Below are positions 13,051 to 52,083 of a DNA stretch of 64,000 bases, in pieces. Position 1 is the stretch's first letter. Each line of letters starts with the position of its first letter. Source of the DNA: Macrostomum lignano. Lineage: Eukaryota. The notes under the pieces are model-generated. The model did no database searches and was not told the DNA's origin. It saw only the letters and a list, made by a program, of their open reading frames with translations. The stretch covers positions 62,001 to 126,000 of the forward strand of contig NIVC01002002.1 in the NCBI GenBank assembly GCA_002269645.1, written 5' to 3'. A program made the position numbers and the translations under genes.

Positions 13051-13549
13051 GCACCCCAACTGCCCCGATTTCACAACCCCAACTGCTATTTCATATTGTG
13101 AAATGTGAAATTCAGAACAGCAGAGTGAGGCCGTGTCTTGATAAGTCTTCATTTAAAAGCGTGAGAAAACTTCTTAGCAAGACGCGAGTGAGACTGAGTA
13201 TATCTATGAATTGAAGAACAACTATGAAGCACAGAATCCCGACAGCACAGAATCCCTACGCGGAAAGCTTCTTATAGAGCCTCTCAACTTAAGCTGCTCG
13301 ACACGCTTTCAATCCCACTCTCCCACTGCCGTCCGACGCCCAGAAGCAAGACGTGGAGTGACAACTCACCCCCCCTCAACTCAGCATTTTCAGACAACCG
13401 TAGGTTTACTGTAGTTCAGTTTTGCACTCAAAAGAAAGGCAACTTAGGCGGCTTTCTTCAATTGTAGCTCCTGTTGCTAAATTTACCATAAATTTGGTTC
13501 AATTGAGCAGCTTTTTTTATAAACTTGGTCTTAATTCAAACGGCAAAAT

Positions 13550-15055
13550 ATGGATTGCTAATCTATTCTATTTGGATTGCTAATCTATTCTATATGGATT
13601 GCTAATCTATTCTATATGGATTGCTAATCTATTCTATATGGATTTCTAAACTAGTCTATATGGATTGCTAATCTAGTCTATATGGATTGCTAATCTATTC
13701 TATATGGATTGCTAATCTATTCTATATGGATTGCTAATCTGTTCTATATGGATTGCTAATCTATTCTATATGGATTGCTAATCTATTCTATGTGGATTGC
13801 TAATCTATTCTATATGGATTGCTAATCTATTCTATATGGATTGCTAATCCATTCTATATGGATTGCTAATCTATTCTATATGGATTGCTAATCTATTCTA
13901 TATGGATTGCTAATCCATTCTATATGGATTGCTAATCTATTCTATATGGATTGCTAATCTATTCTATATGGATTGCTAATCTATTCTATATGGATTGCTA
14001 ATCTATTCTATATAGATTGTTAATCTATTCTATATGGATTGCTAATCTATTCTATATGGATTGCTAATCTATTCTATATGGATTGCTAATCTATTCTATA
14101 TGGATTGCTAATCTATTCTATATGGATTGCTAATCTATTCTATATGGATTGCTAATCTATTCTATATGGATTGCTAATCTATTCTATATGGATTGCTAAT
14201 CTATTCTATATGGATTGCTAATCTATTCTATATGGATTGCTAATCTATTCTATATGGATTGCTAATCTATTCTATATGGATTGCTAATCTATTCTATATG
14301 GATTACTAATCTATTCTATATGGATTACTAATCTATTCTATATGGATTGCTAATCTATTCTATATGGATTGCTAATCTATTCTATATGGATTGCTAATCT
14401 ATTCTATATGGATTTCTAAACTAGTCTATATGGATTGCTAATCTAGTCTATATGGATTGCTAATCTATTCTATATGGATTGCTAATCTATTCTATATGGA
14501 TTGCTAATCTGTTCTATATGGATTGCTAATCTATTCTATATGGATTGCTAATCTATTCTATGTGGATTGCTAATCTATTCTATATGGATTGCTAATCTAT
14601 TCTATATGGATTGCTAATCTATTCTATATGGATTGCTAATCTATTCTATATGGATTGCTAATCTATTCTATATGGATTGCTAATCTATTCTATATGGATT
14701 GCTAATCTATTCTATATGGATTGCTAATCTATTCTATATGGATTGCTAATCTATTCTATATGGATTGCTAATCTATTCTATATAGATTGCTAATCTATTC
14801 TATATGGATTGCTAATCTATTCTATATGGATTGCTAATCTATTCTATATGGATTGCTAATCTATTCTATATGGATTGCTAATCTATTCTATATGGATTGC
14901 TAATCTATTCTATATGGATTGCTAATCTATTCTATATGGATTGCTAATCTATTCTATATGGATTGCTAATCGATTCTATATGGATTGCTAATCGATTCTA
15001 TATGGATTGCTAATCTATTCTATATGGATTGCTAATTTAGTCTATGGATTTGTAA
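13550..15055. repeat. 22-bp satellite, GATTGCTAATC-core family
   Basis: Unit ATGGATTGCTAATCTATTCTAT. Confidence 0.96.
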
Positions 15056-15684
15056 TCTGGCTTATGCTTGAATAATTTTTCCGTATTTTTTTCAGTTTTG
15101 TGCTTTGATTTATTTTTATTTGTAGTTGTTTGTAGGTTTTGTTTATTTGTAGTTTATTTGTTTTTTGTCTATTTCTAGTTCTTTGTTTATTGAAGGCTTT
15201 TATTAATTTGTAGCTTTTTTTCTATTTTTAGTTTCTTGTTTACTTGTATACGTAGGACTCTTTTTATTAGTAGTTTGTTTATTTGTAGCCTTTTGTGCGC
15301 GAAACTGAAAATGGCTGGTGAGTTGTCGATGAGTTGCTGCTCCAGTTCTGGATCTTGCTACAGCTCCAGTTTAACAAAGGATGCCGCTAAAATTCTTCAA
15401 AAAATTCTAAAAAGATGCTGGACCTTGCCCCAGTCTCGCTCCGCTCTGATTTATGCACCCTCATGCCGGTTTTTCCAACTGCTGGCCCTGGAAATCGCTT
15501 TTGCCGCTTTCAAGCTTCCTTCCCATTGGAAACAAAACTGTTCGGGTACAGTACAAGGTCATTGAGATTTATGATTTACAGAGAGCTTCTTGTCCGAGTT
15601 GAGGGGACAAGCGGGTGTTAACGCGTGCTTTTCTGATAGGTAACTGTGTTGCATCCGCCTGGAAAGTAAAATCCTTTACTAACC

Positions 15685-16745
15685 TAGTCTATAGATTGCT
15701 ACCGGTAATCTAGTCTATAGATTGCTACCGGTAATCTAGTCTATAAATTGCTACCGGTAATCTAGTCTATAGATTGCTACCGGTAATCTAGTCTATAAAT
15801 TGCTACCGGTAATCTAGTCTATAGATTGCTACATGGTAATCTAGTCTATAGATAGCTAATCTAGTCTATAGATAGCTAATCTAGTCTATAGATAGCTAAT
15901 CTAGTCTATAGATAGCTAATCTAGTCTATTGATTGCTAATCTAGTTTATGGATAGCTAATCTAGTCTATGGATTGCTAATCTAGTCTATGGATTGCTAAT
16001 CTAGTTTATGGATAGCTAATCTAGTCTATGGATTCCTAATCTAGTCTATGGGTTGATAATATAGTCTATGGATTGCTAATCTAGTCTATAGATAGCTAAT
16101 CTAGTCTATAGATAGCTAATCTAGTCTATAGATAGCTAATCTAGTCTATTGATTGCTAATCTAGTTTATGGATAGCTAATCTAGTCTATGGATTGCTAAT
16201 CTAGTCTATGGATTGCTAATCTAGTTTATGGATAGCTAATCTAGTCTATGGATTCCTAATCTAGTCTATGGGTTGATAATATAGTCTATGGATTGCTAAT
16301 CTAGTTTATGGATAGCTAATCTAGTCTATGGATTCCTAATCTAGTCTATGGGTTGATAATATAGTGTATGGATTGCTAATCTAGTCAATGGATTGTTAAT
16401 CTATTCAATGGATAGCTAATCTAGTCAATGGATTGTTAATCTATTCAATGGATTGCTAATCTATTCTATGGATTGCTAATCTAGTCAATGGATTGTTAAT
16501 CTATTCAATGGATAGCTAATCTAGTCAATGGATTGTTAATCTATTCAATGGATTGCTAATCTATTCTATGGTTTGCTAATCTAGTCAATGGATTGTTAAT
16601 CTATTCAATGGATAGCTAATCTAGTCAATGGATTGTTAATCTATTCAATGTATTGCTAATCTATTCTATGGATTGCTAATCTAGTCAATGGATTGTTAAT
16701 CTATTCAATGGATTGCTAATCTATTCTATGGATTGCTAATCTAGC
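15685..16745. repeat. 26-bp then 20-bp satellite, GATTGCTAATC-core family
   Basis: CTAGTCTATAGATTGCTACCGGTAAT, then GATTGCTAATCTAGTCTATG and variants. Confidence 0.93.
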
Positions 16746-25640: not shown

Positions 25641-26305
25641 GGATGTGTCCGGGTGTCCAATTGGATGCGCTTTCTTGTCGCATATTGATAGATTGAATTT
25701 GACTAGTATTTGAATAATTTGTTTTTAATTATTCAAATTAATTTTTTTAATATTTTTAATGTTTTTAAACAAAAACTGCTTAAATTTGGGCACAACAACA
25801 CAGAGGGAAATATTTAATGTTACCTGGAAGATAAGCAATGCTATTTGATGTGAATGGTGTGTAGGCTCGCTCTTGTTCCACTACTTATAGTAGCTGTTAT
25901 GGAATAGAGCATCCGACAGGAGTTATTCCTCAGGTTCTTTATTTCTAATGCAGAATAGGAGTTTCCATGCAAAAATGATGCATTAAATGATTGAGAAAAT
26001 GGGAGAGCAAAGGGGGGAACGGAATGATGGCGAGGGGAGGCTTGGTATGCTGCTCGCTAATGATCCCGCTTCGGGGTAGGTCGGGAGGCGGCCCCGAATG
26101 AGGCCAGGTGGGCTGGTTAAAGTAACAAAAGAAGAAGCGGAGCGACTCTCCAGTCAAAGAGGCTAGAAGCCCCGCCCAAGCAATTTGCGAGCAGCAAATC
26201 CTGTCTTCTTTTTTAGCCCCGGGCTCCGCTTTGCACAATGATTCGACAATATGATTATTGCACTGCGGCTGACCCGATCTGCCATGTTGCGCATCATAGA
26301 GAGAA

Positions 26306-27190
26306 TGAAGGATTAGAATGGATTGCTAATCTAGCCAACACGAGTGATGAAGGATTAGAATGGCTTGCTAATCTAGCCAACACGAGTGATCAAGGATTAG
26401 AATAGATTGCTAATCTAGCCAACATGAGTAATAAAGGATTAGAATGGTTCGCTAATCTAGCCAACATGAGTAATAAAGGATTAGAAAGGATTGCTAATCT
26501 AGCCAACATGAGTGATAAAGGATTCGAATGGATTGCTAATCTAGTGAGCATGAGTGATGAAGGATTAGAATGGATTGCTAATCTAGCCAACACGAGTGAT
26601 ACAGGATTAGAATGATTGCTAATCTAGCCAACATGGGTGATGAAGGATTAGAATGGATTGCTAATCTAGCCAACACATGTGGATAAGGATTAGAACGGTT
26701 CGCTAATCTAGACAACACGAGTGATGAAGGATTAGAATGGATTGCTAATCTAGTGAACACGAGTGATGAAGGATTAGAATGGATTGCTAATCTAGTGAAC
26801 ATGAGTGATGAAGGATTAGAATGGATTGCTAATCTAACCAACACATGTGGATAAGGATTAGAACGGTTCGCTAATCTAGCCAACACGAGTGATCAAGGAT
26901 TAAAATGGATTGCTAATCTAGTGAGCATGAGTGATGAAGGATTAGAATGGATTGCTAATCTAGTGAGCACGAGCACGAGTGATCAAGGATTAGAATGGAT
27001 TGCTAATCTAGCCAACATGAGTAATAAAGGATTAGAATGGCTTGCTAATCTAGCCAACACGAGTGATGAAGGATTAGAATGGATTGCTAATCTAGTCACC
27101 ATTGATGTAGCAGTGGAAAGGATCGCTAATCTAATAAAATATCATGAAAATACTAGACTGAATTCATAATCTAGTACATGGGTTGCTAAT
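26306..27190. repeat. 42-bp minisatellite, GATTGCTAATC-core family
   Basis: Unit ATGAGTGATGAAGGATTAGAATGGATTGCTAATCTAGCCAAC. Confidence 0.93.
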
Positions 27191-36259: not shown

Positions 36260-36718
36260 TCAAGTCCGCTTCGCCGTGATAACGGAACTCGACGGCTGCC
36301 GCTGACCTCGCATGGACGTCGCCTCCTTCGCTGCCATCGCCACCGCGGCCCTGGCCAGCTCGTGCTGCTCCTCATCGTCCTCGAAGTCGGCCCGGGTGAA
36401 ATAGGCCTCATGGTAGCCCGCCGGGCTATCGCGCTCTGTCAGGGAGCCCGGGTCCTCGCCAACCGAATACAGCCGAACGTCCTCGCTGCGGGCCGTCACC
36501 CCGCCGAGCTGCAGCCGCTTGACGCCGACCAGCACGTTTCTGTTGTAGCAGCTGAAGGAGGCCTCCTTGCCCTTGGAGCTGCGCCAGGCCGTGCTGAGCT
36601 CGCCGGGCTCCAGGACTTCTCGGAGGGACCGGACTACAAAAGCCGGCCTGCTCAGGCAGAGGCTGGCGAGGCGGTCGCCCGGTTGGCCGCGAGGGTCCAG
36701 CTTGCCTTCGAGAATGCG
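36260..36718 (-). CDS. Uncharacterised protein, terminal exon (152 aa + stop)
   Basis: Open frame RILEGKLDPRGQPGDRLASLCLSRPAFVVRSLREVL...SFSCYNRNVLVGVKRL...TAKRT*; GC-rich; phase-0 acceptor CATAG at 36719-36723. Confidence 0.72.
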   Translation of the reverse strand, partial: RILEGKLDPRGQPGDRLASLCLSRPAFVVRSLREVLEPGELSTAWRSSKGKEASFSCYNRNVLVGVKRLQLGGVTARSEDVRLYSVGEDPGSLTERDSPAGYHEAYFTRADFEDDEEQHELARAAVAMAAKEATSMRGQRQPSSSVITAKRT

Positions 36719-36759
36719 CTATGGTAGGAGCATGCGTAGCGCAGGGTGTGTCTGGCGTT

Positions 36760-39700
36760 GCCTGTTCTCCTCTGCCTGCTGACTAGATTAGCAATCCACT
36801 CTGTTCTCCTTTGCCTGTTAGCTAGATTAGCAATCCACTCTGTTCTCCTCTGCCTGCTGGCTAGATTAGCAATCCACTCTGTTCTCCTTTGCCTGTTAGC
36901 TAGATTAGCAATCCACTCTGTTCTCCTTTGCCTGTTAGCTAGATTAGCAATCCACTCTGTTCTCCTTTGCCTGTTAGCTAGATTAGCAATCCACTCTGTT
37001 CTCCTCTGCCTGCTGGCTAGATTAGCAATCCACTCTGTTCTCCTTTGCCTGTTAGCTAGATTAGCAATCTACTCTGCTCTCCTCTGCCTGCTGGCTAGAT
37101 TAGCAATCCACTCTGTTCTCCTTTGCCTGTTAGCTAGATTAGCAATCCACTCTGTTATCTGCCTGTTAGCTAGATTAGCAATCCACTCTGTTCTTCTCTG
37201 CCTGCTGGCTAGATTAGCAATCCACTCTGTTCTTCTCTGCCTGCTGGCTAGATTAGCAATCCACTCTGTTCTCCTTTGCCTGTTGGCTAGATTAGCAATC
37301 CATTCTGTTCTCCTCTGCCTGCTGGCTAAATTAGCAATCCACTCTGTTATCTGCCTGTTAGCTAGATTAGCAATCCACTCTGTTCTCCTTTGCCTGTTAG
37401 CTAGATTAGCAATCCACTCTGTTCTCCTTTGCCTGTTAGCTAGATTAGCAATCCACTCTATTCCTCTGCCTGTTAGCTAGATTAGCAATCCACTCTGTTC
37501 TCCTTTGCCTGTTAGCTAGATTAGCAATCCACTCTGTTCTCCTTTGCCTGTTAGCTAGATTAGCAATCCACTCTGTTCTCCTTTGCCTGTTAGCTAGATT
37601 AGCAATCCACTCTGTTATCTGCCTGTTAGCTAGATTAGCAATCCACTCTGTTCTCCTTTGCCTGTTAGCTAGATTAGCAATCCACTCTGTTCTCCTCTGC
37701 CTGCTGGCTAGATTAGCAATCCACTCTGTTCTCCTTTGCCTGTTAGCTAGATTAGCAATCCACTCTGTTATCTGCCTGCTGGCTAGATTAGCAATCCACT
37801 CTGTTCTTCTCTGCCTGCTGGCTAGATTAGCAATCCACTCTGTTCTTCTCTGCCTGCTGGCTAGATTAGCAATCCACTCTGTTCTCCTTTGCCTGTTGGC
37901 TAGATTAGCAATCCATTCTGTTCTCCTCTGCCTGCTGGCTAAATTAGCAATCCACTCTGTTATCTGCCTGTTAGCTAGATTAGCAATCCACTCTGTTCTC
38001 CTTTGCCTGTTAGCTAGATTAGCAATCCACTCTGTTCTCCTTTGCCTGTTAGCTAGATTAGCAATCCACTCTATTCCTCTGCCTGTTAGCTAGATTAGCA
38101 ATCCACTCTGTTCTCCTTTGCCTGTTAGCTAGATTAGCAATCCACTCTGTTCTCCTTTGCCTGTTAGCTAGATTAGCAATCCACTCTGTTCTCCTTTGCC
38201 TGTTAGCTAGATTAGCAATCCACTCTGTTCTCCTTTGCCTGTTAGCTAGATTAGCAATCCACTCTGTTATCTGCCTGTTAGCTAGATTAGCAATCCACTC
38301 TGTTCTCCTTTGCCTGTTAGCTAGATTAGCAATCCACTCTGTTCTCCTCTGCCTGCTGGCTAGATTAGCAATCCACTCTGTTCTCCTTTGCCTGTTAGCT
38401 AGATTAGCAATCTACTCTGCTCTCCTCTGCCTGCTGGCTAGATTAGCAATCCACTCTGTTCTCCTTTGCCTGTTAGCTAGATTAGCAATCCACTCTGTTA
38501 TCTGCCTGTTAGCTAGATTAGCAATCCACTCTGTTCTCCTTTGCCTGTTAGCTAGATTAGCAATCCACTCTGTTCTCCTCTGCCTGCTGGCTAGATTAGC
38601 AATCCACTCTGTTCATCTCTGCCTGCTGGCTAGATTAGCAATCCACTCTGTTCTTCTCTGCCTGCTGGCTAGATTAGCAATCCACTCTGTTCTCCTTTGC
38701 CTGTTAGCTAGATTAGCAATCCACTCTGCTTCTCCTCTGCCTGCTGGCTAGATTAGCAATCCACTCTGTTCTCCTTTGCCTGTTAGCTAGATTAGCAATC
38801 CACTCTGTTCTCTGCCTGCTGACTAGATTAGCAATCCACTCTGTTCCTCTGCCTGCTGACTAGATTAGCAATCCACTCTGTTCCTCTGCCTGCTGACGAG
38901 ATTAGCAATCCACTCTGTTCCTCTGCCTGCTGACTAGATTAGCAATCCACTCTGTTCTCCTTTGCCTGTTAGCTAGATTAGCAATCCACTCTGTTATCTG
39001 CCTGTTAGCTAGATTAGCAATCCACTCTGTTCTCCTCTGCCTGCTGGCTAGATTAGCAATCCACTCTGTTCTCCTTTGCCTGTTAGCTAGATTAGCAATC
39101 CACTCTGTTCTCCTCTGTCTGCTGGCTAGATTAGCAATCCACTCTGTTCTCTTTTGCCTGTTAGCTAGATTAGCAATCCACTCTGTTCTCCTTTGCCTGT
39201 TAGCTAGATTAGCAATCCACTCTGTTCTCCTCTGCCTGCTGGCTAGATTAGCAATCCACTCTGTTCTCCTTTGCCTGTTAGCTAGATTAGCAATCCACTC
39301 TGCTCTCCTCTGCCTGCTGGCTAGATTAGCAATCCACTCTGTTCTCCTTTGCCTGTTAGCTAGATTAGCAATCCACTCTGTTATCTGCCTGTTAGCTAGA
39401 TTAGCAATCCACTCTGTTCTTCTCTGCCTGCTGGCTAGATTAGCAATCCACTCTGTTCTTCTCTGCCTGCTGGCTAGATTAGCAATCCACTCTGTTCTCC
39501 TTTGCCTGTTGGCTAGATTAGCAATCCATTCTGTTCTCCTCTGCCTGCTGGCTAAATTAGCAATCCACTCTGTTATCTGCCTGTTAGCTAGATTAGCAAT
39601 CCACTCTGTTCTCCTTTGCCTGTTAGCTAGATTAGCAATCCACTCTGTTCTCCTTTGCCTGTTAGCTAGATTAGCAATCCACTCTTTCCTCTGCCTGTTA

Positions 39701-42700
39701 GCTAGATTAGCAATCCACTCTGTTCTCCTTTGCCTGTTAGCTAGATTAGCAATCCACTCTGTTCTCCTTTGCCTGTTAGCTAGATTAGCAATCCACTCTG
39801 TTCTCCTTTGCCTGTTAGCTAGATTAGCAATCCACTCTGTTATCTGCCTGTTAGCTAGATTAGCAATCCACTCTGTTCTCCTTTGCCTGTTAGCTAGATT
39901 AGCAATCCACTCTGTTCTCCTCTGCCTGCTGGCTAGATTAGCAATCCACTCTGTTCTCCTTTGCCTGTTAGCTAGATTAGCAATCCACTCTGTTATCTGC
40001 CTGCTGGCTAGATTAGCAATCCACTCTGTTCTTCTCTGCCTGCTGGCTAGATTAGCAATCCACTCTGTTCTTCTCTGCCTGCTGGCTAGATTAGCAATCC
40101 ACTCTGTTCTCCTTTGCCTGTTGGCTAGATTAGCAATCCACTCTGTTCTTCTCTGCCTGCTGGCTAGATTAGCAATCCACTCTGTTATCTGCCTGTTAGC
40201 TAGATTAGCAATCCACTCTGTTCTCCTTTGCCTGTTAGCTAGATTAGCAATCCACTCTGTTCTCCTTTGCCTGTTAGCTAGATTAGCAATCCACTCTTTC
40301 CTCTGCCTGTTAGCTAGATTAGCAATCCACTCTGTTCTCCTTTGCCTGTTAGCTAGATTAGCAATCCACTCTGTTCTCCTTTGCCTGTTAGCTAGATTAG
40401 CAATCCACTCTGTTCTCCTTTGCCTGTTAGCTAGATTAGCAATCCACTCTGTTATCTGCCTGTTAGCTAGATTAGCAATCCACTCTGTTCTCCTTTGCCT
40501 GTTAGCTAGATTAGCAATCCACTCTGTTCTCCTCTGCCTGCTGGCTAGATTAGCAATCCACTCTGTTCTCCTTTGCCTGTTAGCTAGATTAGCAATCCAC
40601 TCTGTTCTCCTCTGCCTGCTGGCTAGATTAGCAATCCACTCTGTTCTCCTTTGCCTGTTAGCTAGATTAGCAATCCACTCTGTTATCTGCCTGTTAGCTA
40701 GATTAGCAATCCACTCTGTTCTCCTTTGCCTGTTAGCTAGATTAGCAATCCACTCTGTTCTCCTCTGCCTGCTGGCTAGATTAGCAATCCACTCTGTTCT
40801 CTCTGCCTGCTGCTAGATTAGCAATCCACTCTGTTCTTCTCTGCCTGCTGGCTAGATTAGCAATCCACTCTGTTCTCCTTTGCCTGTTAGCTAGATTAGC
40901 AATCCACTCTGTCTCCTCTGCCTGCTGGCTAGATTAGCAATCCACTCTGTTCTCCTTTGCCTGTTAGCTAGATTAGCAATCCACTCTGTTCTCTGCCTGC
41001 TGACTAGATTAGCAATCCACTCTGTTCCTCTGCCTGCTGACTAGATTAGCAATCCACTCTGTTCCTCTGCCTGCTGACTAGATTAGCAATCCACTCTGTT
41101 CCTCTGCCTGCTGACTAGATTAGCAATCCACTCTGTTCTCCTTTGCCTGTTAGCTAGATTAGCAATCCACTCTGTTATCTGCCTGTTAGCTAGATTAGCA
41201 ATCCACTCTGTTCTCCTCTGCCTGCTGGCTAGATTAGCAATCCACTCTGTTCTCCTTTGCCTGTTAGCTAGATTAGCAATCCACTCTGTTCTCCTCTGCC
41301 TGCTGGCTAGATTAGCAATCCACTCTGTTCTCTTTGCCTGTTAGCTAGATTAGCAATCCACTCTGTTCTCCTTTGCCTGTTAGCTAGATTAGCAATCCAC
41401 TCTGTTCTCCTTTGCCTGTTAGCTAGATTAGCAATCCACTCTGTTCTCCTTTGCCTGTTAGCTAGATTAGCAATCCACTCTGTTCTCTCTGCCTGCTGGC
41501 TAGATTAGCAATCCACTCTGTTCTCCTTTGCCTGTTAGCTAGATTAGCAATCCACTCTGTTCTCCTCTGCCTGCTGGCTAGATTAGCAATCCACTCTGTT
41601 CTCCTTTGCCTGTTAGCTAGATTAGCAATCCACTCTGTTCTCTGCCTGCTGACTAGATTAGCAATCCACTCTGTTCCTCTGCCTGCTGACTAGATTAGCA
41701 ATCCACTCTGTTCCTCTGCCTGCTGACTAGATTAGCAATCCACTCTGTTCCTCTGCCTGCTGACTAGATTAGCAATCCACTCTGTTCTCCTTTGCCTGTT
41801 AGCTAGATTAGCAATCCACTCTGTTATCTGCCTGTTAGCTAGATTAGCAATCCACTCTGTTCTCCTTTGCCTGTTAGCTAGATTAGCAATCACTCTATTC
41901 CTCTGCCTGTTAGCTAGATTAGCAATCCACTCTGTTCTCCTTTGCCTGTTAGCTAGATTAGCAATCCACTCTGTTCTCCTTGCCTGTTAGCTAGATTAGC
42001 AATCCACTCTGTTATCTGCCTGTTAGCTAGATTAGCAATCCACTCTGTTCTCCTTTGCCTGTTAGCTAGATTAGCAATCCACTCTGTTCTCCTCTGCCTG
42101 CTGGCTAGATTAGCAATCCACTCTGTTCTCCTTTGCCTGTTAGCTAGATTAGCAATCCACTCTGTTCTCCTTTGCCTGTTAGCTAGATTAGCAATCCACT
42201 CTGCTCTCCTCTGCCTGCTGGCTAGATTAGCAATCCACTCTGTTCTCCTTTGCCTGTTAGCTAGATTAGCAATCCACTCTGTTCTTCTCTGCCTGTTAGC
42301 TAGATTAGCAATCCACTCTGTTCTTCTCTGCCTGCTGGCTAGATTAGCAATCCACTCTGTTCTCCTTTGCCTGTTAGCTAGATTAGCAATCCATCTGTTC
42401 TTCTCTGCCTGCTGGCTAGATTAGCAATCCACTCTGTTCTTCTCTGCCTGCTGGCTAGATTAGCAATCCACTCTGTTCTTCTCTGCCTGCTGGCTAGATT
42501 AGCAATCCACTCTGTTCTCCTTTGCCTGTTGGCTAGATTAGCAATCCATCTGTTCTCCTCTGCCTGCTGGCTAGATTAGCAATCCACTCTGTTATCTGCC
42601 TGTTAGCTAGATTAGCAATCCACTCTGTTCTCCTTTGCCTGTTAGCTAGATTAGCAATCCACTCTGTTCTCCTTTGCCTGTTAGCTAGATTAGCAATCCA

Positions 42701-45700
42701 CTCTGTTCCTCTGCCTGTTAGCTAGATTAGCAATCCACTCTGTTCTCCTTTGCCTGTTAGCTAGATTAGCAATCCACTCTGTTCTCCTTTGCCTGTTAGC
42801 TAGATTAGCAACCACTCTGTTCTCCTTTGCCTGTTAGCTAGATTAGCAATCCACTCTGTTATCTGCCTGTTAGCTAGATTAGCAATCCACTCTGTTCTCC
42901 TTTGCCTGTTAGCTAGATTAGCAATCCACTCTGTTCTCCTCTGCCTGCTGGCTAGATTAGCAATCCACTCTGTTCCTCTGCCTGTTAGCTAGATTAGCAA
43001 TCCACTCTGTTCTCCTTTGCCTGTTAGCTAGATTAGCAATCCACTCTGTTCTTCTCTGCCTGCTGGCTAGATTAGCAATCCACTCTGTTCTCCTTTGCCT
43101 GTTAGCTAGATTAGCAATCCACTCTGTTCTCCTCTGCCTGCTGGCTAGATTAGCAATCCACTCTGTTCTCCTTTGCCTGTTAGCTAGATTAGCAATCCAC
43201 TCTGTTCTCCTCTGCCTGCTGGCTAGATTAGCAATCCACTCTGTTCTCCTTTGCCTGTTAGCTAGATTAGCAATCCACTCTGTTCTCCTTTGCCTGTTAG
43301 CTAGATTAGCAATCCACTCTGTTCTCCTTTGCCTGTTAGCTAGATTAGCAATCCACTCTGTTCTCTCTGCCTGCTGGCTAGATTAGCAATCCACTCTGTT
43401 CTTCTCTGCCTGCTGGCTAGATTAGCAATCCACTCTGTTATCTGCCTGTTAGCTAGATTAGCAATCCACTCTGTTCTCCTTTGCCTGTTAGCTAGATTAG
43501 CAATCCACTCTGTTCTCCTCTGCCTGCTGGCTAGATTAGCAATCCACTCTGTTCTCCTTTGCCTGTTAGCTAGATTAGCAATCCACTCTGTCTCCTCTGC
43601 CTGCTGGCTAGATTAGCAATCCACTCTGTTCTCCTTTGCCTGTTAGCTAGATTAGCAATCCACTCTGTTCTCTGCCTGTTAGCTAGATTAGCAATCCACT
43701 CTGTTCTCCTTTGCCTGTTAGCTAGATTAGCAATCCACTCTGTTCTCCTCTGCCTGCTGGCTAGATTAGCAATCCACTCTGTTCATCTCTGCCTGCTGGC
43801 TAGATTAGCAATCCACTCTGTTCTCTCTGCCTGCTGGCTAGATTAGCAATCCACTCTGTTCTCCTTTGCCTGTTAGCTAGATTAGCAATCCACTCTGTCT
43901 CCTCTGCCTGCTGGCTAGATTAGCAATCCACTCTGTTCTCCTTTGCCTGTTAGCTGGATTAGCAATCCACTCTGTTCTCTGCCTGCTGACTAGATTAGCA
44001 ATCCACTCTGTTCCTCTGCCTGCTGACTAGATTAGCAATCCACTCTGTTCCTCTGCCTGCTGACGAGATTAGCAATCCACTCTGTTCCTCTGCCTGCTGA
44101 CTAGATTAGCAATCCACTCTGTTCTCCTTTGCCTGTTAGCTAGATTAGCAATCCACTCTGTTATCTGCCTGTTAGCTAGATTAGCAATCCACTCTGTTCT
44201 CCTCTGCCTGCTGGCTAGATTAGCAATCCACTCTGTTCTCCTTTGCCTGTTAGCTAGATTAGCAATCCACTCTGTTCTCCTCTGCTGCTGGCTAGATTAG
44301 CAATCCACTCTGTTCTCTTTGCCTGTTAGCTAGATTAGCAATCCACTCTGTTCTCCTTTGCCTGTTAGCTAGATTAGCAATCCACTCTGTTCTCCTTTGC
44401 CTGTTAGCTAGATTAGCAATCCACTCTGATCTCCTTTGCCTGTTAGCTAGATTAGCAATCCACTCTGTTCTTCTCTGCCTGCTGGCTAGATTAGCAATCC
44501 ACTCTGTTCTCCTTTGCCTGTTAGCTAGATTAGCAATCCACTCTGTCTCCTCTGCCTGCTGGCTAGATTAGCAATCCACTCTGTTCTCCTTTGCCTGTTA
44601 GCTAGATTAGCAATCCACTCTGTTCTCTGCCTGCTGACTAGATTAGCAATCCACTCTGTTCCTCTGCCTGCTGACTAGATTAGCAATCCACTCTGTTCCT
44701 CTGCCTGCTGACTAGATTAGCAATCCACTCTGTTCCTCTGCCTGCTGACTAGATTAGCAATCCACTCTGTTCTCCTTTGCCTGTTAGCTAGATTAGCAAT
44801 CCACTCTGTTATCTGCCTGTTAGCTAGATTAGCAATCCACTCTGTTCTCCTTTGCCTGTTAGCTAGATTAGCAATCCACTCTATTCCTCTGCCTGTTAGC
44901 TAGATTAGCAATCCACTCTGTTCTCCTTTGCCTGTTAGCTAGATTAGCAATCCACTCTGTTCTCCTTGCCTGTTAGCTAGATTAGCAATCCACTCTGTTA
45001 TCTGCCTGTTAGCTAGATTAGCAATCCACTCTGTTCTCCTTTGCCTGTTAGCTAGATTAGCAATCCACTCTGTTCTCCTCTGCCTGCTGGCTAGATTAGC
45101 AATCCACTCTGTTCTCCTTTGCCTGTTAGCTAGATTAGCAATCCACTCTGTTCTCCTTTGCCTGTTAGCTAGATTAGCAATCCACTCTGTCTCCTCTGCC
45201 TGCTGGCTAGATTAGCAATCCACTCTGTTCTCCTTTGCCTGTTAGCTAGATTAGCAATCCACTCTGTTCTCCTCTGCCTGCTGGCTAGATTAGCAATCCA
45301 ATCTGTTCTCATTTGCCTGTTAGCTAGATTAGCAATCCACTCTGTTCTTCTCTGCCTGTTGGCTAGATTAGCAATCCACTCTGTTCTTCTCTGCCTGCTG
45401 GCTAGATTAGCAATCTACTCTGTTCTCCTTTGCCTGTTAGCTAGATTAGCAATCCATTCTGTTCTTCTCTGCCTGCTGGCTAGATTAGCAATCCACTCTG
45501 TTCTTCTCTGCCTGCTGGCTAGATTAGCAATCCACTCTGTTCTTCTCTGCCTGCTGGCTAGATTAGCAATCCACTCTGTTCTCCTTTGCCTGTTGGCTAG
45601 ATTAGCAATCCATTCTGTTCTCCTCTGCCTGCTGGCTAAATTAGCAATCCACTCTGTTATCTGCCTGTTAGCTAGATTAGCAATCCACTCTGTTCTCCTT

Positions 45701-47530
45701 TGCCTGTTAGCTAGATTAGCAATCCACTCTGTTCTCCTTTGCCTGTTAGCTAGATTAGCAATCCACTCTATTCCTCTGCCTGTTAGCTAGATTAGCAATC
45801 CACTCTGTTCTCCTTTGCCTGTTAGCTAGATTAGCAATCCACTCTGTTCTCCTTTGCCTGTTAGCTAGATTAGCAACCACTCTGTTCTCCTTTGCCTGTT
45901 AGCTAGATTAGCAATCCACTCTGTTATCTGCCTGTTAGCTAGATTAGCAATCCACTCTGTTCTCCTTTGCCTGTTAGCTAGATTAGCAATCCACTCTGTT
46001 CTCCTCTGCCTGCTGGCTAGATTAGCAATCCACTCTGTTCCTCTGCCTGTTAGCTAGATTAGCAATCCACTCTGTTCTCCTTTGCCTGTTAGCTAGATTA
46101 GCAATCCACTCTGTTCTTCTCTGCCTGCTGGCTAGATTAGCAATCCACTCTGTTCTCCTTTGCCTGTTAGCTAGATTAGCAATCCACTCTGTTCTCCTCT
46201 GCCTGCTGGCTAGATTAGCAATCCACTCTGTTCTCCTTTGCCTGTTAGCTAGATTAGCAATCCACTCTGTTCTCCTCTGCCTGCTGGCTAGATTAGCAAT
46301 CCACTCTGTTCTCCTTTGCCTGTTAGCTAGATTAGCAATCCACTCTGTTCTCCTTTGCCTGTTAGCTAGATTAGCAATCCACTCTGTTCTCCTTTGCCTG
46401 TTAGCTAGATTAGCAATCCACTCTGTTCTTCTCTGCCTGCTGGCTAGATTAGCAATCCACTCTGTTCTTCTCTGCCTGTTAGCTAGATTAGCAATCCACT
46501 CTGTTCTCCTTTGCCTGTTGGCTAGATTAGCAATCCATTCTGTTCTTCTCTGCCTGCTGGCTAGATTAGCAATCCACTCTGTTCTTCTCTGCCTGCTGGC
46601 TAGATTAGCAATCCACTCTGTTCTCCTTTGCCTGTTAGCTAGATTAGCAATCCACTCTGTTCTCCTCTGCCTGCTGACTAGATTAGCAATCCACTCTGTT
46701 CCTCTGCCTGCTGACTAGATTAGCAATCCAGTCTGTTCCTCTGCCTGTTAGCTAGATTAGCAATCCATTTATTCCTCTGCCTGTTAGCTAGATTAGCAAT
46801 CCACTCTGTTCCTCTGCCTGTTAGCTAGATTAGCAATCCATTTATTCCTCTGCCTGTTAGCTAGATTAGCAATCCATTTATTCCTCTGCCTGTTAGCTAG
46901 ATTAGCAATCCACTCTGTTCCTCTGCCTGTTAGCTAGATTAGCAATCCATTCTGTTCCTCTGCCTGTTAGCTAGATGTTAGCTAGATTAGCAATCCATTC
47001 TGTTCCTCTGCCTGTTAGCTGGATGTTAGCTAGATAAGCAATCCAGTCTGTTCCTCTGCCTGTTAGCTAGATTAGCAATCCATTTATTCCTCTGCCTGTT
47101 AGCTAGATGTTAGCTAGATAAGCAATCCAGTCTGTTCCTCTGCCTGTTAGCTAGATTAGCAATCCATTTATTCCTCTGCCTGTTAGCTAGATTAGCAATC
47201 CATTTATTCCTCTGCCTGTTAGCTAGATTAGCAATCCATTTATTCCTCTGCCTGTTAGCTAGATTAGCAATCCATTTATTCCTCTGCCTGTTAGCTAGAT
47301 TAGCAATCCACTCTATTCCTCTGCCTGTTAGCTAGATTAGCAATCCAGTCTGTTCCTCTGCCTGTTAGCTAGATTAGCAATCCATTTATTCCTCGGCCTG
47401 TTAGCTAGATTAGCAATCCATTTATTCCTCTGCCTGTTAGCTAGATTAGCAATCCACTCTATTCCTCTGCCTGTTAGCTAGATTAGCAATCCACTCTATT
47501 CCTCTGCCTGTTAGCTAGATTAGCAATCCA
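36760..47530. repeat. ~10.8-kb 36-39-bp satellite, GATTGCTAATC-core family (inverted orientation), intronic
   Basis: Unit TAGATTAGCAATCCACTCTGTTCTCCTTTGCCTGTTAGC; roughly 280 copies by length/unit. Confidence 0.98.
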
Positions 47531-47560
47531 TAATTTCTACTTATAGTCAATGTCACTCAC

Positions 47561-47701
47561 CTGGTTCTGCTTATCGTACAGAATGGCGCACCTGTCTGCC
47601 TCATTAGTCCGCAAGCCATTCTGTGGCAGCTCCCCCTGCCGCTCCGAGCCTCTGTCATCGCTGGAGCCGTCGCTCAGAGGCTCCTCGCCGTCGTCTTCCA
47701 T
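47561..47701 (-). CDS. Uncharacterised protein, first coding exon (47 aa)
   Basis: MEDDGEEPLSDGSSDDRGSERQGELPQNGLRTNEADRCAILYDKQNQ followed by a GTGAGT donor (47555-47560), phase 0, joining in frame to 36718. Confidence 0.68.
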
Positions 47702-50223
47702 TCGGATCGCTGTTGCAGAAAATCACAATTACTTTCACTGAGCTGGCTGCGTGTTAACTTCTGCTTTTCCAGGTGAGATTTGATCTCGCCAAGCCGCCCG
47801 TTTCCTGAGCGCAATTTTCTGCTTCTTCTAGTAGCCAGCAGGTGCACAGATGAAAGAGTTGAAGAAATTCTTAGGGCAGAAAGAAAAGTTTTCGTACAGT
47901 AGCTGCGGAAGCCTCCCGGCGGCTCTCTGCCCTTGAGCTTCTTGAGCCTGCATGTCTGGCATACCCCTCCGCCTCTCCTCTCCCCCCGTCTCCAAGTCGG
48001 CATTGGCCAACAAGGTGAAACGGTTCCCCGCGCTGCAAGCTCAAGAAAAGTTTCTACTCTGTGCATTTGCGATAACAAACTTTGCTAGCTTGGCTACTTT
48101 TCAAAGCGACAGGCCTCTTATACCCCCGCTGCGCCCGTTTGAGTCTTGCTTGTTTAAGAAAGAAAACCAGAGGTCGATTTTACTACAATATTTGTAGGTA
48201 AATTTAAGAACGATCCACTTCTCTACTACTCAAGCATGGAAAGTAGGCTGTATCGTTTAGAAGTAATCAACAAAAGTAGACCAGTACATATTTTTGAAGC
48301 ATAAATCAATCGACAATCATAAGTATATGTTTTAATAGCTAGTGAACACTTGTATTTGAATCAAACACAGATATATGGGATGTGAAGCTGGGAAAGGATT
48401 AACTATGTGGGGTAGATTCTAAATAAAACACTGGGTTTATTCATTTATTGATTTTTCAGCTTAAAACTGAAGTCACGTTACAACAGTGCGTCTGACGAAA
48501 CAGTTAAATAAAACATTTACGCTACTGTAAGTAGTAAATAAAGCATGTGTGAGCAAAGTTTCTATACAATTTGAGACCATTGACTCCAAAAATTGTGCCG
48601 TTTAAGGAAACGATCAAAAGCAGCATTTTGAAACGAAATAAATAAACAAAAGCATTCAACGAAGCTGATAATCTATACGAATATAATCAATCTTATGAAA
48701 CAGATATCTGCATGCTAGACTTAACAACAAATAGTACATCGTGCACTTCCTATAAGGCGCCACTAATTATGAAGAAAATCATATTGAAAACAAGTTCAAT
48801 TACATGGTACAATACAAGCAAAACAGTAGTACGGTATCTATTTACAGGTCGGAGAGCCACAAGGCCGCAGGACCGATCGCTGGAGCAAAGAAATTGACAG
48901 CGGAGCGAATCCTGCGGTAGCGGCCCTCTGTCATGACTAGATTCGACTCTCTCGTGTCTCTCGCAGCGTTGCCGCTTCAAGTTCAAAGCGATCAACAAAA
49001 AGCAAAAAAGCATCAACAAAAAAGCAAGCAGAAAAACACAGGCAAAGCAAAGCAAAACGGAACAATTTGGAGAGAGAGAAACAAAGAAAAGCGATTGCTG
49101 CGTTGAAGCAAAAATTGAAAATTTCCTGTGCAACAGTGAATACCGATGGGGGTGATGAAGCGAACTGACGCAGCTGTGAAGCGTGGCATTCAGTCCTGCC
49201 AACTGGATAACCAATAGAAATCAGCTCATCTGCTCATATTTACACTGATTTGTTACTGCAGCTCGAAAATAAATTAAGAAGATTTTAAATAGCAGGAAAA
49301 CACACAGTAAAACAAAAAAGACATTGCGCATTAAAACAAACGATCAACAAAGTAAAAACTAAGCGTATTTTACAATTCAAGGAACTGCAGCTGACGGAGC
49401 ATCAGCAAAGTTGGCTCAACAATTAAACGAGTCTTGGACTGAGAATTGCGAGCGCAACTATTATTGCATAACATCTGAGAAGCAATCGAAAACAAGTTTA
49501 ATAAACCGAGGTAGTTTTGGCCGGTAAATTCGATTCTACACCAATCCCATGCAATACTAGCTTGCAACCACAGATACTAGACTAACTAGAAGGGCCTACT
49601 CAGCACATTTGCGTGTAAGCTACTTTCAGTTTAGTAGTAAGTTAATCAGAGGCATTTTAATGTATTTTTAAAGCCAAGGCTTATTTCTTGGCTCTTACCC
49701 CCAGCTCAACCCCTCCAGCCACGCCCCGCCCCAATTTTTTGCCTTTCCCGGAATTCCAGCCTAAAGCTGCCATGTACATTTCAGTGGCCTGGCTAATGTA
49801 CATTATTGCTAAACCAATTTGCACGTTGTTTACGCCTGCAAACTTGGGCTTCTTAACCTATCAAAGTCATTTCAGCTGCCTTTTTATAAAATAGCGTATG
49901 TATTCTTCTTTGCTACTGAACTGAAAGTAGAAAGCTGTTTGACTAAGTATATATGCCTGAGTGACCAATCTAGTCATTTTAGTATCTCTGCTTGCAACCA
50001 TGGACTTTGTTACTGGAAACTGGAACCGTCTAAAGCTGTTATCTGCTTTTTAGCAGGACAGGGTCAGGGTTAGACACCCTGTCCTGCTAAAAAACCTGCT
50101 TTTATTCTATTTTTGCTACTGGAAATCAGATAGAATAATTCTCTCTAACTCAGCACGTGCCACTCCCGTCCAGTTTTTTCAAGTCCGCGGCAGTTTCCAT
50201 GCAGGGGTCCATGGCTTTAATCA

Positions 50224-50856
50224 TTACAGGCAGTCCACATCGAATCTGTCCGCCAAAACCCGGCGCAACCGGGGCGGCAGTCGCCACCATTGAGGCACCG
50301 CGGCGGTCGAGGCCGCAGCAGCCGATGCTGAGCGCGCCAGCACGGCGCAGCACCGGTCCTGCAGGCTCTCGTAGGAGCGCAGCAGCCGGGTGACGGACAT
50401 GCCGGTCTTGGCCGCGGTGGACGACAGCACGGGATAGAGCGGCTCTGGGCAGCTGTCCAGGCCGTCGAAGCCGGACTCCAGCCGGGTGCCGTTCACATAG
50501 AAGCTGAGCTGGCCACGCGGGCCGTCGAACAGCACGCCGACAATGCAGCTCTGATTCTCAGCGAACGGCTCGCACAGCCGCTTAGCTGAACCGTTGTGCC
50601 AGGCCAGGCCTTTGTGCGACAGCGCCCAGCCGTTGCCGTCCCGACCGATGAGGTTCTCCAGGAACTCGTTGGCGTGCAGCTGCGCATCGCCGGTGCACAC
50701 GCCCACCTGCATCGCAGTGCCGAATACTCGATCGCCGAATGTCACCTCCCAGTAGTACACCAGGCCGCGGTCAAGGGGCCGATTCGCCCGGACAGCCGCG
50801 TGTCCGTTGCTCCAGCGTGGATGGAACAGCACTGAGGTTGGCGTCAAAAGGACCGT
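50224..50856 (-). CDS. SPSB3: SPRY domain-containing SOCS box protein 3-like, terminal exon
   Basis: FHPRWSNGHAAVRANRPL...YYWEV...GTAMQVGV...WALSHKGLAWH...PLYPVLSSTAAKT...SLQDRCCAVL...LPPRL is a SPRY domain plus SOCS box. Phase-0 acceptor at 50857-50858, TAA stop. Confidence 0.9.
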   Translation of the reverse strand, partial: TVLLTPTSVLFHPRWSNGHAAVRANRPLDRGLVYYWEVTFGDRVFGTAMQVGVCTGDAQLHANEFLENLIGRDGNGWALSHKGLAWHNGSAKRLCEPFAENQSCIVGVLFDGPRGQLSFYVNGTRLESGFDGLDSCPEPLYPVLSSTAAKTGMSVTRLLRSYESLQDRCCAVLARSASAAAASTAAVPQWWRLPPRLRRVLADRFDVDCL

Positions 50857-50907
50857 CTGTCAAGTGTTCGAGGTAGGATATGCGGTGATGCAATTTGGCT
50901 TTAAAAC

Positions 50908-51200
50908 TTGGGATGGCTCAGCCAGGTGAACTGTCTGTGTCTGGGATGGCTCAGCCAAGTGAACTGTCTGTGTCTGGGATGGCTCAGCCAGGTGAACTGT
51001 CTGTGTCTGGGATGGCTCAGCCAGGTGAGCTGTCTGTGTCTGGGATGGCTCAGCCAGGTGAACTGTCTGTGTCTGGGATGGCTCAGCCAGGTGAACTGTC
51101 TGTGTCTGGGATGGCTCAGACAAGTGGACTGTCTGTGTCTGGGATGGCTCAGCCAGGTGAACTGTCTGTGTCTGGGATGGCTCAGCCAGGTATGTCTAGG
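50908..51200. repeat. 33-bp minisatellite in SPSB3 intron
   Basis: Unit CTGGGATGGCTCAGCCAGGTGAACTGTCTGTGT. Confidence 0.93.
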
Positions 51201-51599
51201 ATGTCTGCGATACTTCACTTAAGACCTTGTATATCTATGTACTTGTATATCTTGTACATCCAAAATGAAGCCGAATTCAGACTTAAAATGCACTTGAAAA
51301 GCGTTACGAAAACTAAAAAAAGTTTTGGACACCGAATGCATTTGCTTTGTACAAAAGATTTTTTGTAAAGGAGTGTGTGTGTATGTGTGTGTGTGTTAGT
51401 GCGAAATCTCAAATTTCCCGGATGGCTGAAAATGGCTAGTTGCTAACCCAATAAAGCGTGCTATGGGTGCAGACAATGTCGTTTCAAAGCAGTTCTTTCT
51501 GAGTGCGTGGGCGGCTGCAGGGAAAGTCAAAGCCCTCTTGGAGTAAGATGCTGATTTAGCAGGATGCGAATGAGGCACTGATCTATCTCACAGGATGTG

Positions 51600-52083
51600 A
51601 TCAAGGCAGGACAGGGTGGGGATTAAGGCAGGACAGGGTGGGGATTAAGGCAGGACAGGGTGGGGATTAAGGCAGGACAGGGTGGGGATTAAGGCAGGAC
51701 AGGGTGGGGATTAAGGCAGGACAGGGTGGGGATTAAGGCAGGACAGGGTGGGGATTAAGGCAGCACAGGGTGGGGATTAAGGCAGCACAGGGTGGGGATT
51801 AAGGCAGCACAGGGTGGGGATTAAGGCAGGACAGGGTGGGGATTAAGGCAGGACAGGGTGGGGATTAAGGCAGGACAGGGTGGGGATTAAGGCAGGACAG
51901 GGTGGGGATTAAGGCAGGAAAGGGTGGGGATTGAGGCAGGACAGGGTGGGGATTAAGGCAGGACAGGGTGGGGATTAAGGCAGGACAGGGTGGGGATTAA
52001 GGCAGGAAAGGGTGGGGATTGAGGCAGGACAGGGTGGGGATTAAGGCAGCACAGGGTGGGGATTAAGGAAGGACAGGGTGGGG
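51600..52083. repeat. 22-bp G-rich minisatellite in SPSB3 intron
   Basis: Unit AAGGCAGGACAGGGTGGGGATT. Confidence 0.95.

What the first reader, a model, noticed from the sequence alone, without database searches (positions are those of the whole stretch)
36719..47560. A 10.8-kb intron that is about 99% satellite, each unit carrying two branch-point-like CUAAY motifs on the sense strand
Seen: only about 30 nt (donor side) and about 40 nt (acceptor side) of the 10,842-nt intron are non-repetitive. The sense unit reads GUGGAUUG-CUAAU-CUAG-CUAAC-AG/GCAAAGGAGAACAGA: two CUAAY motifs, then CAG, with a purine-rich spacer and no pyrimidine tract (some variant units have only one CUAAY). Known: CURAY is the metazoan branch-point consensus, and bipartite (A)CUAAY...UAAY is the STAR-family (QKI/HOW/SF1) binding element. 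Inference: the pre-mRNA or excised intron would present hundreds of such sites and could act as a sponge or nuclear scaffold, or as a splicing delay. The spliceosome must also ignore about 280 decoy branch-point/AG pairs.
Basis: partly seen in the sequence, partly recalled or inferred. Interest (0 to 1): 0.7.

Follow-up and report, generated by a model that had tools for sequence, protein, structure and literature searches.

The report
Minisatellite-filled intron in a flatworm gene
A 10.8-kb intron of an orphan gene in the flatworm Macrostomum lignano is almost entirely a 39-bp tandem repeat; it is the largest of many repeat arrays filling the long introns nearby, and nothing found here shows that its branch-point-like motifs have a function of their own.

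Summary
Window 36719-47560 (minus strand) is a GT-AG, phase-0 intron of 10,842 nt. Of this, 10,769 nt (99.3%) are 281 copies of a 39-nt unit, and the sense strand carries 455 CUAAY motifs.

The window is Macrostomum lignano contig NIVC01002002.1. The two flanking exons translate exactly to the 199-aa GenBank protein BOX15_Mlig018395g1, an orphan gene whose model came from an RNA-seq-guided pipeline.

The functional reading is not backed by what I could test:
- Every CUAAY is preceded by G (UGCUAAU, AGCUAAC), so the STAR/QKI hexamer NACUAA is never present.
- The second motif is present in only 61% of units.
- The same 15-nt core, GGATTGCTAATCTAG, builds three other arrays (periods 20-26, 22 and 42) on the opposite strand, outside annotated genes.
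- Half the window is minisatellite, and every intron over 300 nt whose borders I could place is 38-80% unrelated arrays.

In the sense orientation the array is poor in splice signals. Only 10 of 1,807 AGs reach the pyrimidine content of the weakest real acceptor, against 732 of 739 on the antisense strand. It has no GTRAG and no AGGT.

Nested 0.6-3-kb internal duplications and diverged edge units indicate growth by unequal exchange.

Best reading: an over-expanded intronic minisatellite that is tolerated, not a demonstrated RNA device.

The parts
47561..47701 (-). Exon 1 coding part (ATG at 47701-47699, 47 codons) of BOX15_Mlig018395g1
   Evidence: The translation joined to exon 2 equals the GenBank protein, 199 of 199 aa. 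The intron is phase 0.
47710..47726 (-). Acceptor-like site GATTTTCTGCAACAG| 8 nt upstream of the ATG; possible spliced-leader or 5'UTR acceptor (inference)
   Evidence: Read directly from the sequence. Trans-splicing is common in M. lignano (PMC5730564).
36719..47560 (-). The intron, 10,842 nt, GT-AG, phase 0
47531..47560 (-). Non-repeat 5' end of the intron, including the donor GTGAGT. This is the only GTRAG in the intron.
36762..47530 (-). 39-nt minisatellite array (A4), 281 units. The sense unit is GGAUUGCUAAUCUAGCUAACAGGCAAAGGAGAACAGAGU.
46768..47430 (-). Diverged donor-side edge units (84% identical to the consensus). Ten of them carry AATAAA on the sense strand.
36719..36761 (-). Non-repeat 3' end of the intron with the acceptor CTCCTACCATAG. 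The last 33 nt contain no AG and there is no CTAAY in this stretch.
36260..36718 (-). Exon 2 coding part (152 codons plus stop)
   Evidence: GC at codon positions 1/2/3 is 0.68/0.51/0.84.
26305..27095 (+). Related array A3 (42-mer). It shares 21 nt, GGATTGCTAATCTAGCCAACA, with variants of A4 and lies in the opposite orientation.
15680..16744 (+). Related arrays A2' and A2 (26-mer and 20-mer) with the same core
13548..15045 (+). Related array A1 (22-mer) with the same core

Best explanation
This is an over-expanded minisatellite (VNTR-type tandem array) that occupies almost the whole single intron of a small, lineage-restricted protein-coding gene of Macrostomum lignano.

Shown:
- The array belongs to a local family of four arrays that share the core GGATTGCTAATCTAG.
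- It has nested multi-unit duplications and diverged edge units.
- On the sense strand it lacks donors, AG|GT sites and pyrimidine tracts.

Inferred:
- It grew in place by unequal sister-chromatid or homologue exchange, and by slippage of blocks of 1 to about 80 units.
- It is transcribed as part of the pre-mRNA and removed in one step, from the only good donor (GTGAGT) to the only acceptor that has a pyrimidine-rich, AG-free run-up.
- It persists because in this orientation it does little harm to splicing.
- The CUAAY motifs are a property inherited from the family core, not a feature selected in this RNA.
- Its only likely consequences are extra transcription time, a large lariat, and perhaps some premature polyadenylation at the AATAAA-bearing edge units.
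For: 1. Array anatomy is as reported.
2. Twenty-unit blocks at lags of 16, 57-58, 78-80 and 135 units are 97-99.5% identical, against a 91-93% background. Edge bins are 84% identical to the consensus, against 93-95% in the interior. This is the classic signature of unequal exchange.
3. The same 15-nt core occurs in arrays of period 22, 20/26 and 42 at 13548-15045, 15680-16744 and 26305-27095, on the other strand. Their unique flanks share no homology.
4. The window is 50% tandem repeat, or 40% without this array, against 13.1% genome-wide.
5. PKG introns longer than 300 nt are 38%, 75% and 80% unrelated arrays, while introns of 77-165 nt have none. The SPSB3-like gene's roughly 1.3-kb intron holds arrays at 50909-52084.
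6. On the sense strand, only 10 of 1,807 AGs reach the Y20 score of the weakest real acceptor (at least 11 pyrimidines in the 20 nt upstream), against 732 of 739 on the antisense strand. There is one GTRAG (the true donor) and no AGGT.
7. The STAR hexamer is absent, and the second CUAAY is present in only 61% of units.
8. No Rfam family matches the array, and the sense RNA is not structured (z = +1.5).
Against: - No expression, lariat or population data could be examined, so neutrality is an inference.
- The core (unit positions 1-16) is at least 97% invariant across the 182 units of 39 nt and is free of indels, and it is shared between arrays. This could also reflect constraint on the core.
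- A3 lies 300 nt upstream of a coding-like plus-strand ORF. A3 and A4 may therefore both present the core in the sense orientation of their nearest gene (n = 2, not significant).
- About 100 decoy AGs have 7 pyrimidines in the 12 nt upstream (Y12 = 7), equal to the weakest real acceptors, so some mis-splicing is conceivable.
- Array length in a 2017 PacBio assembly may be inexact.
Confidence: 0.72

Rival explanations
1. The sense repeat RNA, as nascent intron or excised lariat, is a multivalent platform of branch-point-like sites that titrates SF1, U2 snRNP or a STAR protein (QKI/HOW orthologue), or that scaffolds a nuclear body.
For: There are 455 yUnAy-type motifs, all on the sense strand. 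The sense RNA is predicted to be unstructured and therefore accessible. UGCUAAU also occurs twice at branch-point distance (-33 and -21) in a real 96-nt PKG intron, so it is plausibly read as a branch site in this species. Repeat RNAs that sequester proteins are known in other systems (my own knowledge).
Against: None of the 455 motifs has the A required at hexamer position 2 for high-affinity STAR binding. The second motif is missing from 39% of units. The same core occurs in arrays outside annotated genes and on the other strand. Another CTAAT-rich array, at 6574-6984, is antisense to its host PKG intron. Any 39-nt unit matches several RNA-binding-protein motifs, for example GGAGAA. The host is an orphan gene of unknown expression.
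Confidence: 0.06
2. The core acts at the DNA level. GGATTGCTAATCTAG would be a binding site for a sequence-specific protein (TAATC/GATTA resembles homeodomain-type sites), so the arrays would act as clustered regulatory, insulating, heterochromatin-nucleating or recombination-promoting elements. That binding would explain why the core is conserved and shared.
For: The core is invariant within the array and shared by four arrays of different period, whereas the spacers differ. A DNA site would be expected to work in either orientation, which fits the mixed orientations.
Against: No protein is known and none was tested. Sharing can be explained by common descent within a 35-kb neighbourhood: in the 20-22-mers the core is nearly the whole unit, so the 'core' may simply be what all the arrays retained. 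Dozens of unrelated arrays populate the same window.
Confidence: 0.1
3. Length-based intron delay. The array is kept because 10.8 kb of extra transcription delays production of the mRNA.
For: The intron is about 10 times the reported mean intron length of 1.1-1.4 kb.
Against: At typical Pol II rates the delay is only minutes (my own knowledge). Any sequence would serve this purpose. No timing-sensitive role is known for this orphan protein.
Confidence: 0.04
4. Partly an assembly artefact. The exons are truly adjacent in the mRNA, but the array's length or internal order is mis-assembled.
For: The assembly authors stress the difficulty caused by repeats. Only one contig carries the gene.
Against: The array has an ordered, non-random variant structure. 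Its internal duplicates have diverged (97-99.5%, not 100%) and its edges are degenerate, as expected of a real array.
Confidence: 0.08

Closest known systems
Large intronic VNTR/minisatellite arrays of vertebrates (for example the 30-mer array in CACNA1C intron 3; from my own knowledge)
   Same: Tens of bp per unit, kilobases of head-to-tail copies inside an intron, internal variant structure, growth by unequal exchange, and removal with the intron.
   Different: Here the array is essentially the whole intron, reaching to within about 30-43 nt of both splice sites. It sits in a genome region where nearly every long intron is built this way.
Satellite-containing gigantic introns of the Drosophila Y-linked genes kl-3 and kl-5 (PMC6508621)
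   Same: Introns consisting largely of tandem satellite that must be transcribed through and spliced out.
   Different: The Drosophila introns are megabase-sized, made of simple satellites, and need dedicated RNA-binding proteins in spermatocytes. This one is 10.8 kb with a 39-nt unit, and nothing is known of its expression or cofactors.
Core-sharing minisatellite families (Jeffreys-type 'core' minisatellites; from my own knowledge)
   Same: Several arrays with different unit lengths share a 14-21-nt core.
   Different: The core is unrelated to the GC-rich, chi-like human core. Sharing was seen only within 35 kb, so local descent is enough to explain it.
STAR/QKI response elements and SF1/QKI branch-point competition (PMC2905418; PMC13004596)
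   Same: A CUAAY followed 9 nt later by a UAAC half-site, in 61% of units.
   Different: The hexamer reads UGCUAA or AGCUAA, not NACUAA, so the required A is replaced by G in all 455 motifs.
Repeat-rich RNAs that capture RNA-binding proteins (hsr-omega, PNCTR, NORAD, expanded intronic repeats; from my own knowledge)
   Same: Hundreds of copies of a short motif on one transcript.
   Different: Those RNAs have shown protein binding and accumulation. There is no such evidence here, and the best-guess motif fails the sequence test.

Membership tests
Minisatellite / VNTR-type tandem array | Head-to-tail copies of a 10-100-bp unit | tested here: met
   Period 39, 280.9 copies; 281 core-anchored units.
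Minisatellite / VNTR-type tandem array | Internal variant repeats and higher-order duplications; diverged array edges | tested here: met
   47 variants. Blocks at lags of 16, 57, 78 and 135 units are 97-99.5% identical, and the edges are 84% identical to the consensus.
Minisatellite / VNTR-type tandem array | Copy-number polymorphism between individuals or lines | not testable with these tools
   Only one assembly contig was available.
Spliceosomal intron of an expressed gene | GT-AG borders, an ORF continuous across the junction, and a transcript-based model | tested here: met
   The annotation pipeline is RNA-seq-based. No reads were inspected here.
Metazoan branch-point consensus (yUnAy / CURAY) | Sequence match | tested here: met
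   455 CUAAY on the sense strand.
Metazoan branch-point consensus (yUnAy / CURAY) | Actual use as a branch site | not testable with these tools
   This needs lariat sequencing. The nearest CUAAU is 70 nt from the 3' splice site, with several AGs in between.
STAR (QKI/GLD-1/HOW/SF1) binding element | Core hexamer NA(C/A)UAA with A at position 2 | tested here: not met
   All 455 motifs are preceded by G; ACUAAY count is 0. The requirement comes from PMC2905418.
STAR (QKI/GLD-1/HOW/SF1) binding element | UAAY half-site within 1-20 nt | tested here: met
   UAAC lies 9 nt downstream in 172 of 281 units.
Recursive splice sites | Juxtaposed AG|GT | tested here: not met
   No AGGT in the sense array.
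Satellite-bearing gigantic introns (Drosophila kl-3/kl-5 type) | Intron made mostly of tandem satellite | tested here: met
   99.3% repeat, but on a kilobase, not megabase, scale.
Satellite-bearing gigantic introns (Drosophila kl-3/kl-5 type) | Dedicated expression programme and RNA-binding proteins | not testable with these tools
   No expression data were available.
Protein-sequestering repeat RNA | Demonstrated protein binding and RNA accumulation | not testable with these tools
   Sequence shows only that the motif is multivalent.
Known structured RNA family (Rfam) | Match at the gathering score | tested here: not met
   Only two tRNAs matched, elsewhere in the window.

The most novel reading that the evidence does not exclude
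The array is kept because its transcript works as a multivalent branch-point mimic. Several hundred UGCUAAU/AGCUAAC sites on one nascent intron or lariat would locally titrate SF1/U2 or a flatworm STAR protein with relaxed specificity. That would tune splicing in the cells expressing this gene, or it would mark a class of M. lignano minisatellites seeded from duplicated branch-point segments that drive intron growth.
Probability: 0.06. Interest if true: 0.7.

Novelty: new member of a known kind. Interest (0 to 1): 0.3.

Why it matters
For this locus, the result is that a striking motif pattern is most simply a by-product of repeat amplification. That conclusion saves a wet-lab chase unless the cheap checks listed under next steps say otherwise.

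More generally, the window shows how M. lignano introns become long. Here, every intron over 300 nt whose borders could be placed consists mainly of minisatellite arrays that reach almost to the splice sites. At least for the largest array, the strand that is transcribed is the one almost free of splice-site mimics.

If that orientation rule holds genome-wide, it would be a clean natural example of splicing-based selection on repeat orientation. It would also be a practical warning for gene prediction and transgene design in this model flatworm.

Tried and rejected
1. Homologues of the host protein. A word-indexed search of 5.8 billion proteins found only the protein itself. A full HMMER scan of 1.84 billion representatives gave three weak hits to unrelated families (an unclassified repetitive protein, an fn3 protein and SKA2), judged spurious. 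Pfam gave nothing. AlphaFold without an alignment gave pLDDT 36.7, so no fold search was run.

2. A paralogous or homeologous copy of the locus, to compare intron length. Searches with the neighbouring SPSB3-like and PKG exons returned no M. lignano protein with a contig. The single M. lignano hit is not in the contig index. This was a dead end.

3. Literature on the core sequence or the gene identifier: nothing relevant. No paper found describes M. lignano minisatellite families.

4. A transposon origin for the core-sharing arrays. Their unique flanks share no homology within the window.

5. Recursive splicing was rejected because the array has no AGGT.

6. Stops in all three frames of the unit were rejected: sense frame 2 is open.

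7. Structured RNA was rejected.

8. Three ORFs at 60.6-62.7 kb that looked retroelement-like to me gave no Pfam hit, so no claim is made about them.
Full report
**What is there.**
Tandem Repeats Finder reports a single array at 36762-47530 with period 39, 280.9 copies, 91% matches and 3% indels. On the minus strand the region begins CAG|GTGAGTGACATTGAC... and ends ...GCTCCTACCATAG|CGCATT. It is therefore a canonical GT-AG interval of 10,842 nt.

Anchoring on the 15-nt core GGATTGCTAATCTAG gives 281 units in 47 sequence variants. The consensus GGATTGCTAATCTAGCTAACAGGCAAAGGAGAACAGAGT makes up 100 of them. Shorter 36-38-nt variants carry deletions in the purine-rich half.

The sense strand holds 455 CTAAY and the antisense strand none. 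172 units carry two, 108 carry one and 1 carries three. Only about 31 nt at the donor end and about 43 nt at the acceptor end lie outside the array.

**Which gene and organism.**
Joining 47701-47561 to 36718-36260 gives a 199-codon ORF. It is 100% identical over its full length to the GenBank protein BOX15_Mlig018395g1 of Macrostomum lignano. That protein is encoded on contig NIVC01002002.1 of assembly GCA_002269645.1, and its gene span of 11,442 nt equals exon 1 + intron + exon 2.

GenBank models for this assembly were produced from a genome-guided RNA-seq transcriptome (PMC5730564). The exon join therefore has transcript support by provenance, although I could not inspect reads.

The ORF has the same codon-position GC pattern (0.67/0.49/0.82) as the verified SPRY and PKG exons nearby, which argues that it is coding. 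It is an orphan. It has no Pfam domain and no credible homologue in two very large protein searches, and single-sequence structure prediction was uninformative (pLDDT 36.7).

The neighbours, both on the minus strand, are:
- an SPSB3-like SPRY gene at 50224-53345;
- a cGMP-dependent protein kinase (PKG) gene running from before position 1 to about 10367.

**Testing the motif reading.**
CUAAY fits the loose metazoan branch-point consensus. UGCUAAU also occurs twice at -33 and -21 from the acceptor of a real 96-nt PKG intron, so it is plausibly a usable branch sequence in this species.

The STAR-protein reading fails on sequence. All 455 motifs are preceded by G (UGCUAAU, AGCUAAC), and there is no ACUAAY. 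Quantitative binding work shows that Qk-1 tolerates substitutions only at hexamer position 1 of UACUAA, and that no other single substitution competes measurably (PMC2905418). SF1/QKI competition is described for ACUAA (PMC13004596 abstract).

The second motif is also not a fixed feature of the repeat. Unit positions 17 and 19 are only 61% and 65% conserved, and 108 units read CCAGC, TCAGC or CCAAC instead.

A random 39-mer of this composition has at least one CTAAY with P = 0.053 and at least two with P = 0.0013. This is unremarkable given how many arrays this genome must contain. Other arrays in the same window are equally CTAAY-dense. One of them, at 6574-6984, lies antisense to the PKG intron that holds it.

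**Are there 280 dangerous decoys?**
Six real acceptors in the window, including this intron's, have 11-17 pyrimidines in the 20 nt upstream of the YAG (Y20) and 7-9 in the nearest 12 nt (Y12). Only 10 of the 1,807 AGs in the sense array reach Y20 of 11 or more, whereas 732 of the 739 antisense AGs do.

The sense strand is 65% purine and its longest pyrimidine run is 5 nt. It contains one GTRAG, which is the true donor, and no AGGT, so it has neither internal donors nor recursive splice sites.

The real acceptor is preceded by a 33-nt AG-free, C/T-rich stretch. About 100 decoys (CTAATCTAGCCAG|C) have Y12 = 7, equal to the weakest real sites, so occasional mis-splicing cannot be excluded.

The orientation actually present is by far the more benign for splicing. 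The sense RNA is predicted to be unstructured (z = +1.5), and no Rfam family matches it.

**Context changes the picture.**
The same 15-nt core matches 411 times in the window with up to 2 mismatches (0.16 expected). It builds three further arrays on the plus strand:

| Array | Coordinates | Unit |
|---|---|---|
| A1 | 13548-15045 | 22-mer |
| A2', A2 | 15680-16744 | 26-mer, 20-mer |
| A3 | 26305-27095 | 42-mer; shares 21 nt with variants of the big array |

Their unique flanks share no homology. None lies in an annotated gene, although A3 sits 300 nt upstream of an unannotated, coding-like plus-strand ORF.

A second, unrelated family also has members in both orientations, at 20978-21963 and 22501-23316.

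Overall, 50% of the window is tandem repeat, or 40% without the big array, against 13.1% for the genome. Among the PKG introns whose borders I could place, those of 77, 96 and 165 nt have no array. Those of 365, 576 and about 1,540 nt are 75%, 80% and 38% unrelated minisatellite. The SPSB3-like gene's roughly 1.3-kb intron is about 60% arrays, with approximate borders.

Satellite-filled introns are therefore the local rule. This one is the extreme case, about 10 times longer than the others and about 10 times the reported mean intron length.

**How the array grew.**
Twenty-unit blocks compared at lags of 16, 57-58, 78-80 and 135 units reach 97-99.5% identity, against 91-93% for arbitrary lags. 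The first and last 20 units are 84% identical to the consensus, against 93-95% inside.

Nested block duplications of 0.6-3 kb and degenerate edges are what unequal exchange and slippage produce. Because the duplicates have diverged, they also argue against a simple assembly duplication.

**Best explanation and rivals.**
I conclude, with about 0.7 confidence, that this is an over-expanded intronic minisatellite of a locally amplified core family. It is transcribed and removed with the intron, and it is tolerated because its sense strand is poor in splice signals. The CUAAY motifs are inherited from the family core.

The rivals are:
- an RNA sponge or branch-point mimic (about 0.06);
- a DNA-level role for the conserved core, such as a protein-binding array or recombination signal (about 0.1);
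- a pure length or delay function (about 0.04);
- partial mis-assembly of the array length (about 0.08, and not exclusive of the others).

None of these can be settled from sequence alone. The invariance and sharing of the core is the one observation that the neutral model explains only by common descent.

**Comparison with known systems.**
It works like the large intronic VNTRs of vertebrates and, on a much smaller scale, like the satellite-filled giant introns of the Drosophila Y-linked fertility genes (PMC6508621). The core-sharing arrays recall Jeffreys-type minisatellite families. It fails the sequence definition of a STAR/QKI response element and of recursive splice sites. Membership in the class of protein-sequestering repeat RNAs cannot be tested here.

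**Verdict.**
It is a new member of a known kind, with interest of about 0.3. The most useful follow-up is computational: junction, poly(A) and strand-specific read mapping at this locus, plus a genome-wide census of array orientation in introns.

Noticed in passing
window 1-64000: Half of the window (32.2 kb) is tandem repeat, in more than 30 distinct arrays of 0.15-1.5 kb spaced every 0.5-1 kb. This is about four times the genome-wide 13% reported for M. lignano.
   Followed up: partly
window 401-3825 and 50860-52200 (minus strand): In the PKG and SPSB3-like genes, every intron over 300 nt is 38-80% unrelated minisatellite, often reaching within tens of nt of the splice sites. Introns under 170 nt have none. 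Here, long introns are long because of arrays.
   Followed up: partly
window 20978-21963 (+) and 22501-23316 (-): Two arrays of a second family, sharing the 22-nt segment AGTGAAGAATCTCAGGGTGAGA, face each other in inverted orientation across a 537-bp spacer. The layout is foldback-like. The second array's plus strand carries CACTAAC, a perfect STAR/branch-point heptamer.
   Followed up: partly
window 401-496 (minus strand): The 96-nt PKG intron contains TTGCTAAT twice, 11 nt apart, at -33 and -21 from its acceptor. This is the same octamer as the satellite core, in sense orientation at branch-point distance. It may be a proto-repeat of a branch-site segment.
   Followed up: partly
window 46768-47430 (minus strand): Ten diverged units at the donor-side edge of the array read GGAATAAAT. 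They place AATAAA on the sense strand 134-790 nt into the intron, where they could act as premature polyadenylation signals.
   Followed up: no
window 27393-28553 (+): A 387-codon ORF not in the GenBank annotation has a coding-like GC pattern at codon positions 1/2/3 (0.65/0.54/0.82). It has hydrophobic, membrane-like segments plus poly-Gly and poly-Gln runs, and no Pfam hit. It lies 300 nt downstream of core-family array A3.
   Followed up: partly
window 5795-6343 and 9903-10367 (minus strand): Two separate coding-like exons each encode a coiled-coil/leucine-zipper-like stretch followed by a pseudosubstrate-like motif (RTKRMAISG and RRNRGVGISAEPQ). This suggests alternative N-terminal exons of the PKG gene, as in vertebrate PKG I alpha/beta (my inference).
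   Followed up: no
window 58536-58609 (+) and 58921-58994 (-): Two tRNA-Asp(GTC) genes with identical scores lie in inverted orientation about 310 bp apart. They are followed by a perfect (ACAT)x147 microsatellite at 59360-59949.
   Followed up: partly
window 47710-47726 (minus strand): A good acceptor-like site (GATTTTCTGCAACAG|) lies 8 nt upstream of the host gene's ATG. It may be a spliced-leader trans-splice or 5'UTR acceptor. The SPSB3-like gene ends 2.5 kb upstream on the same strand.
   Followed up: no
window 36746-37480 (+) and similar: Because the unit is 39 nt (13 codons), one antisense frame stays open and gives repetitive pseudo-ORFs of up to 244 aa (LLCLLARLAIHSV repeated). This is a trap for ORF callers, not a gene.
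   Followed up: yes
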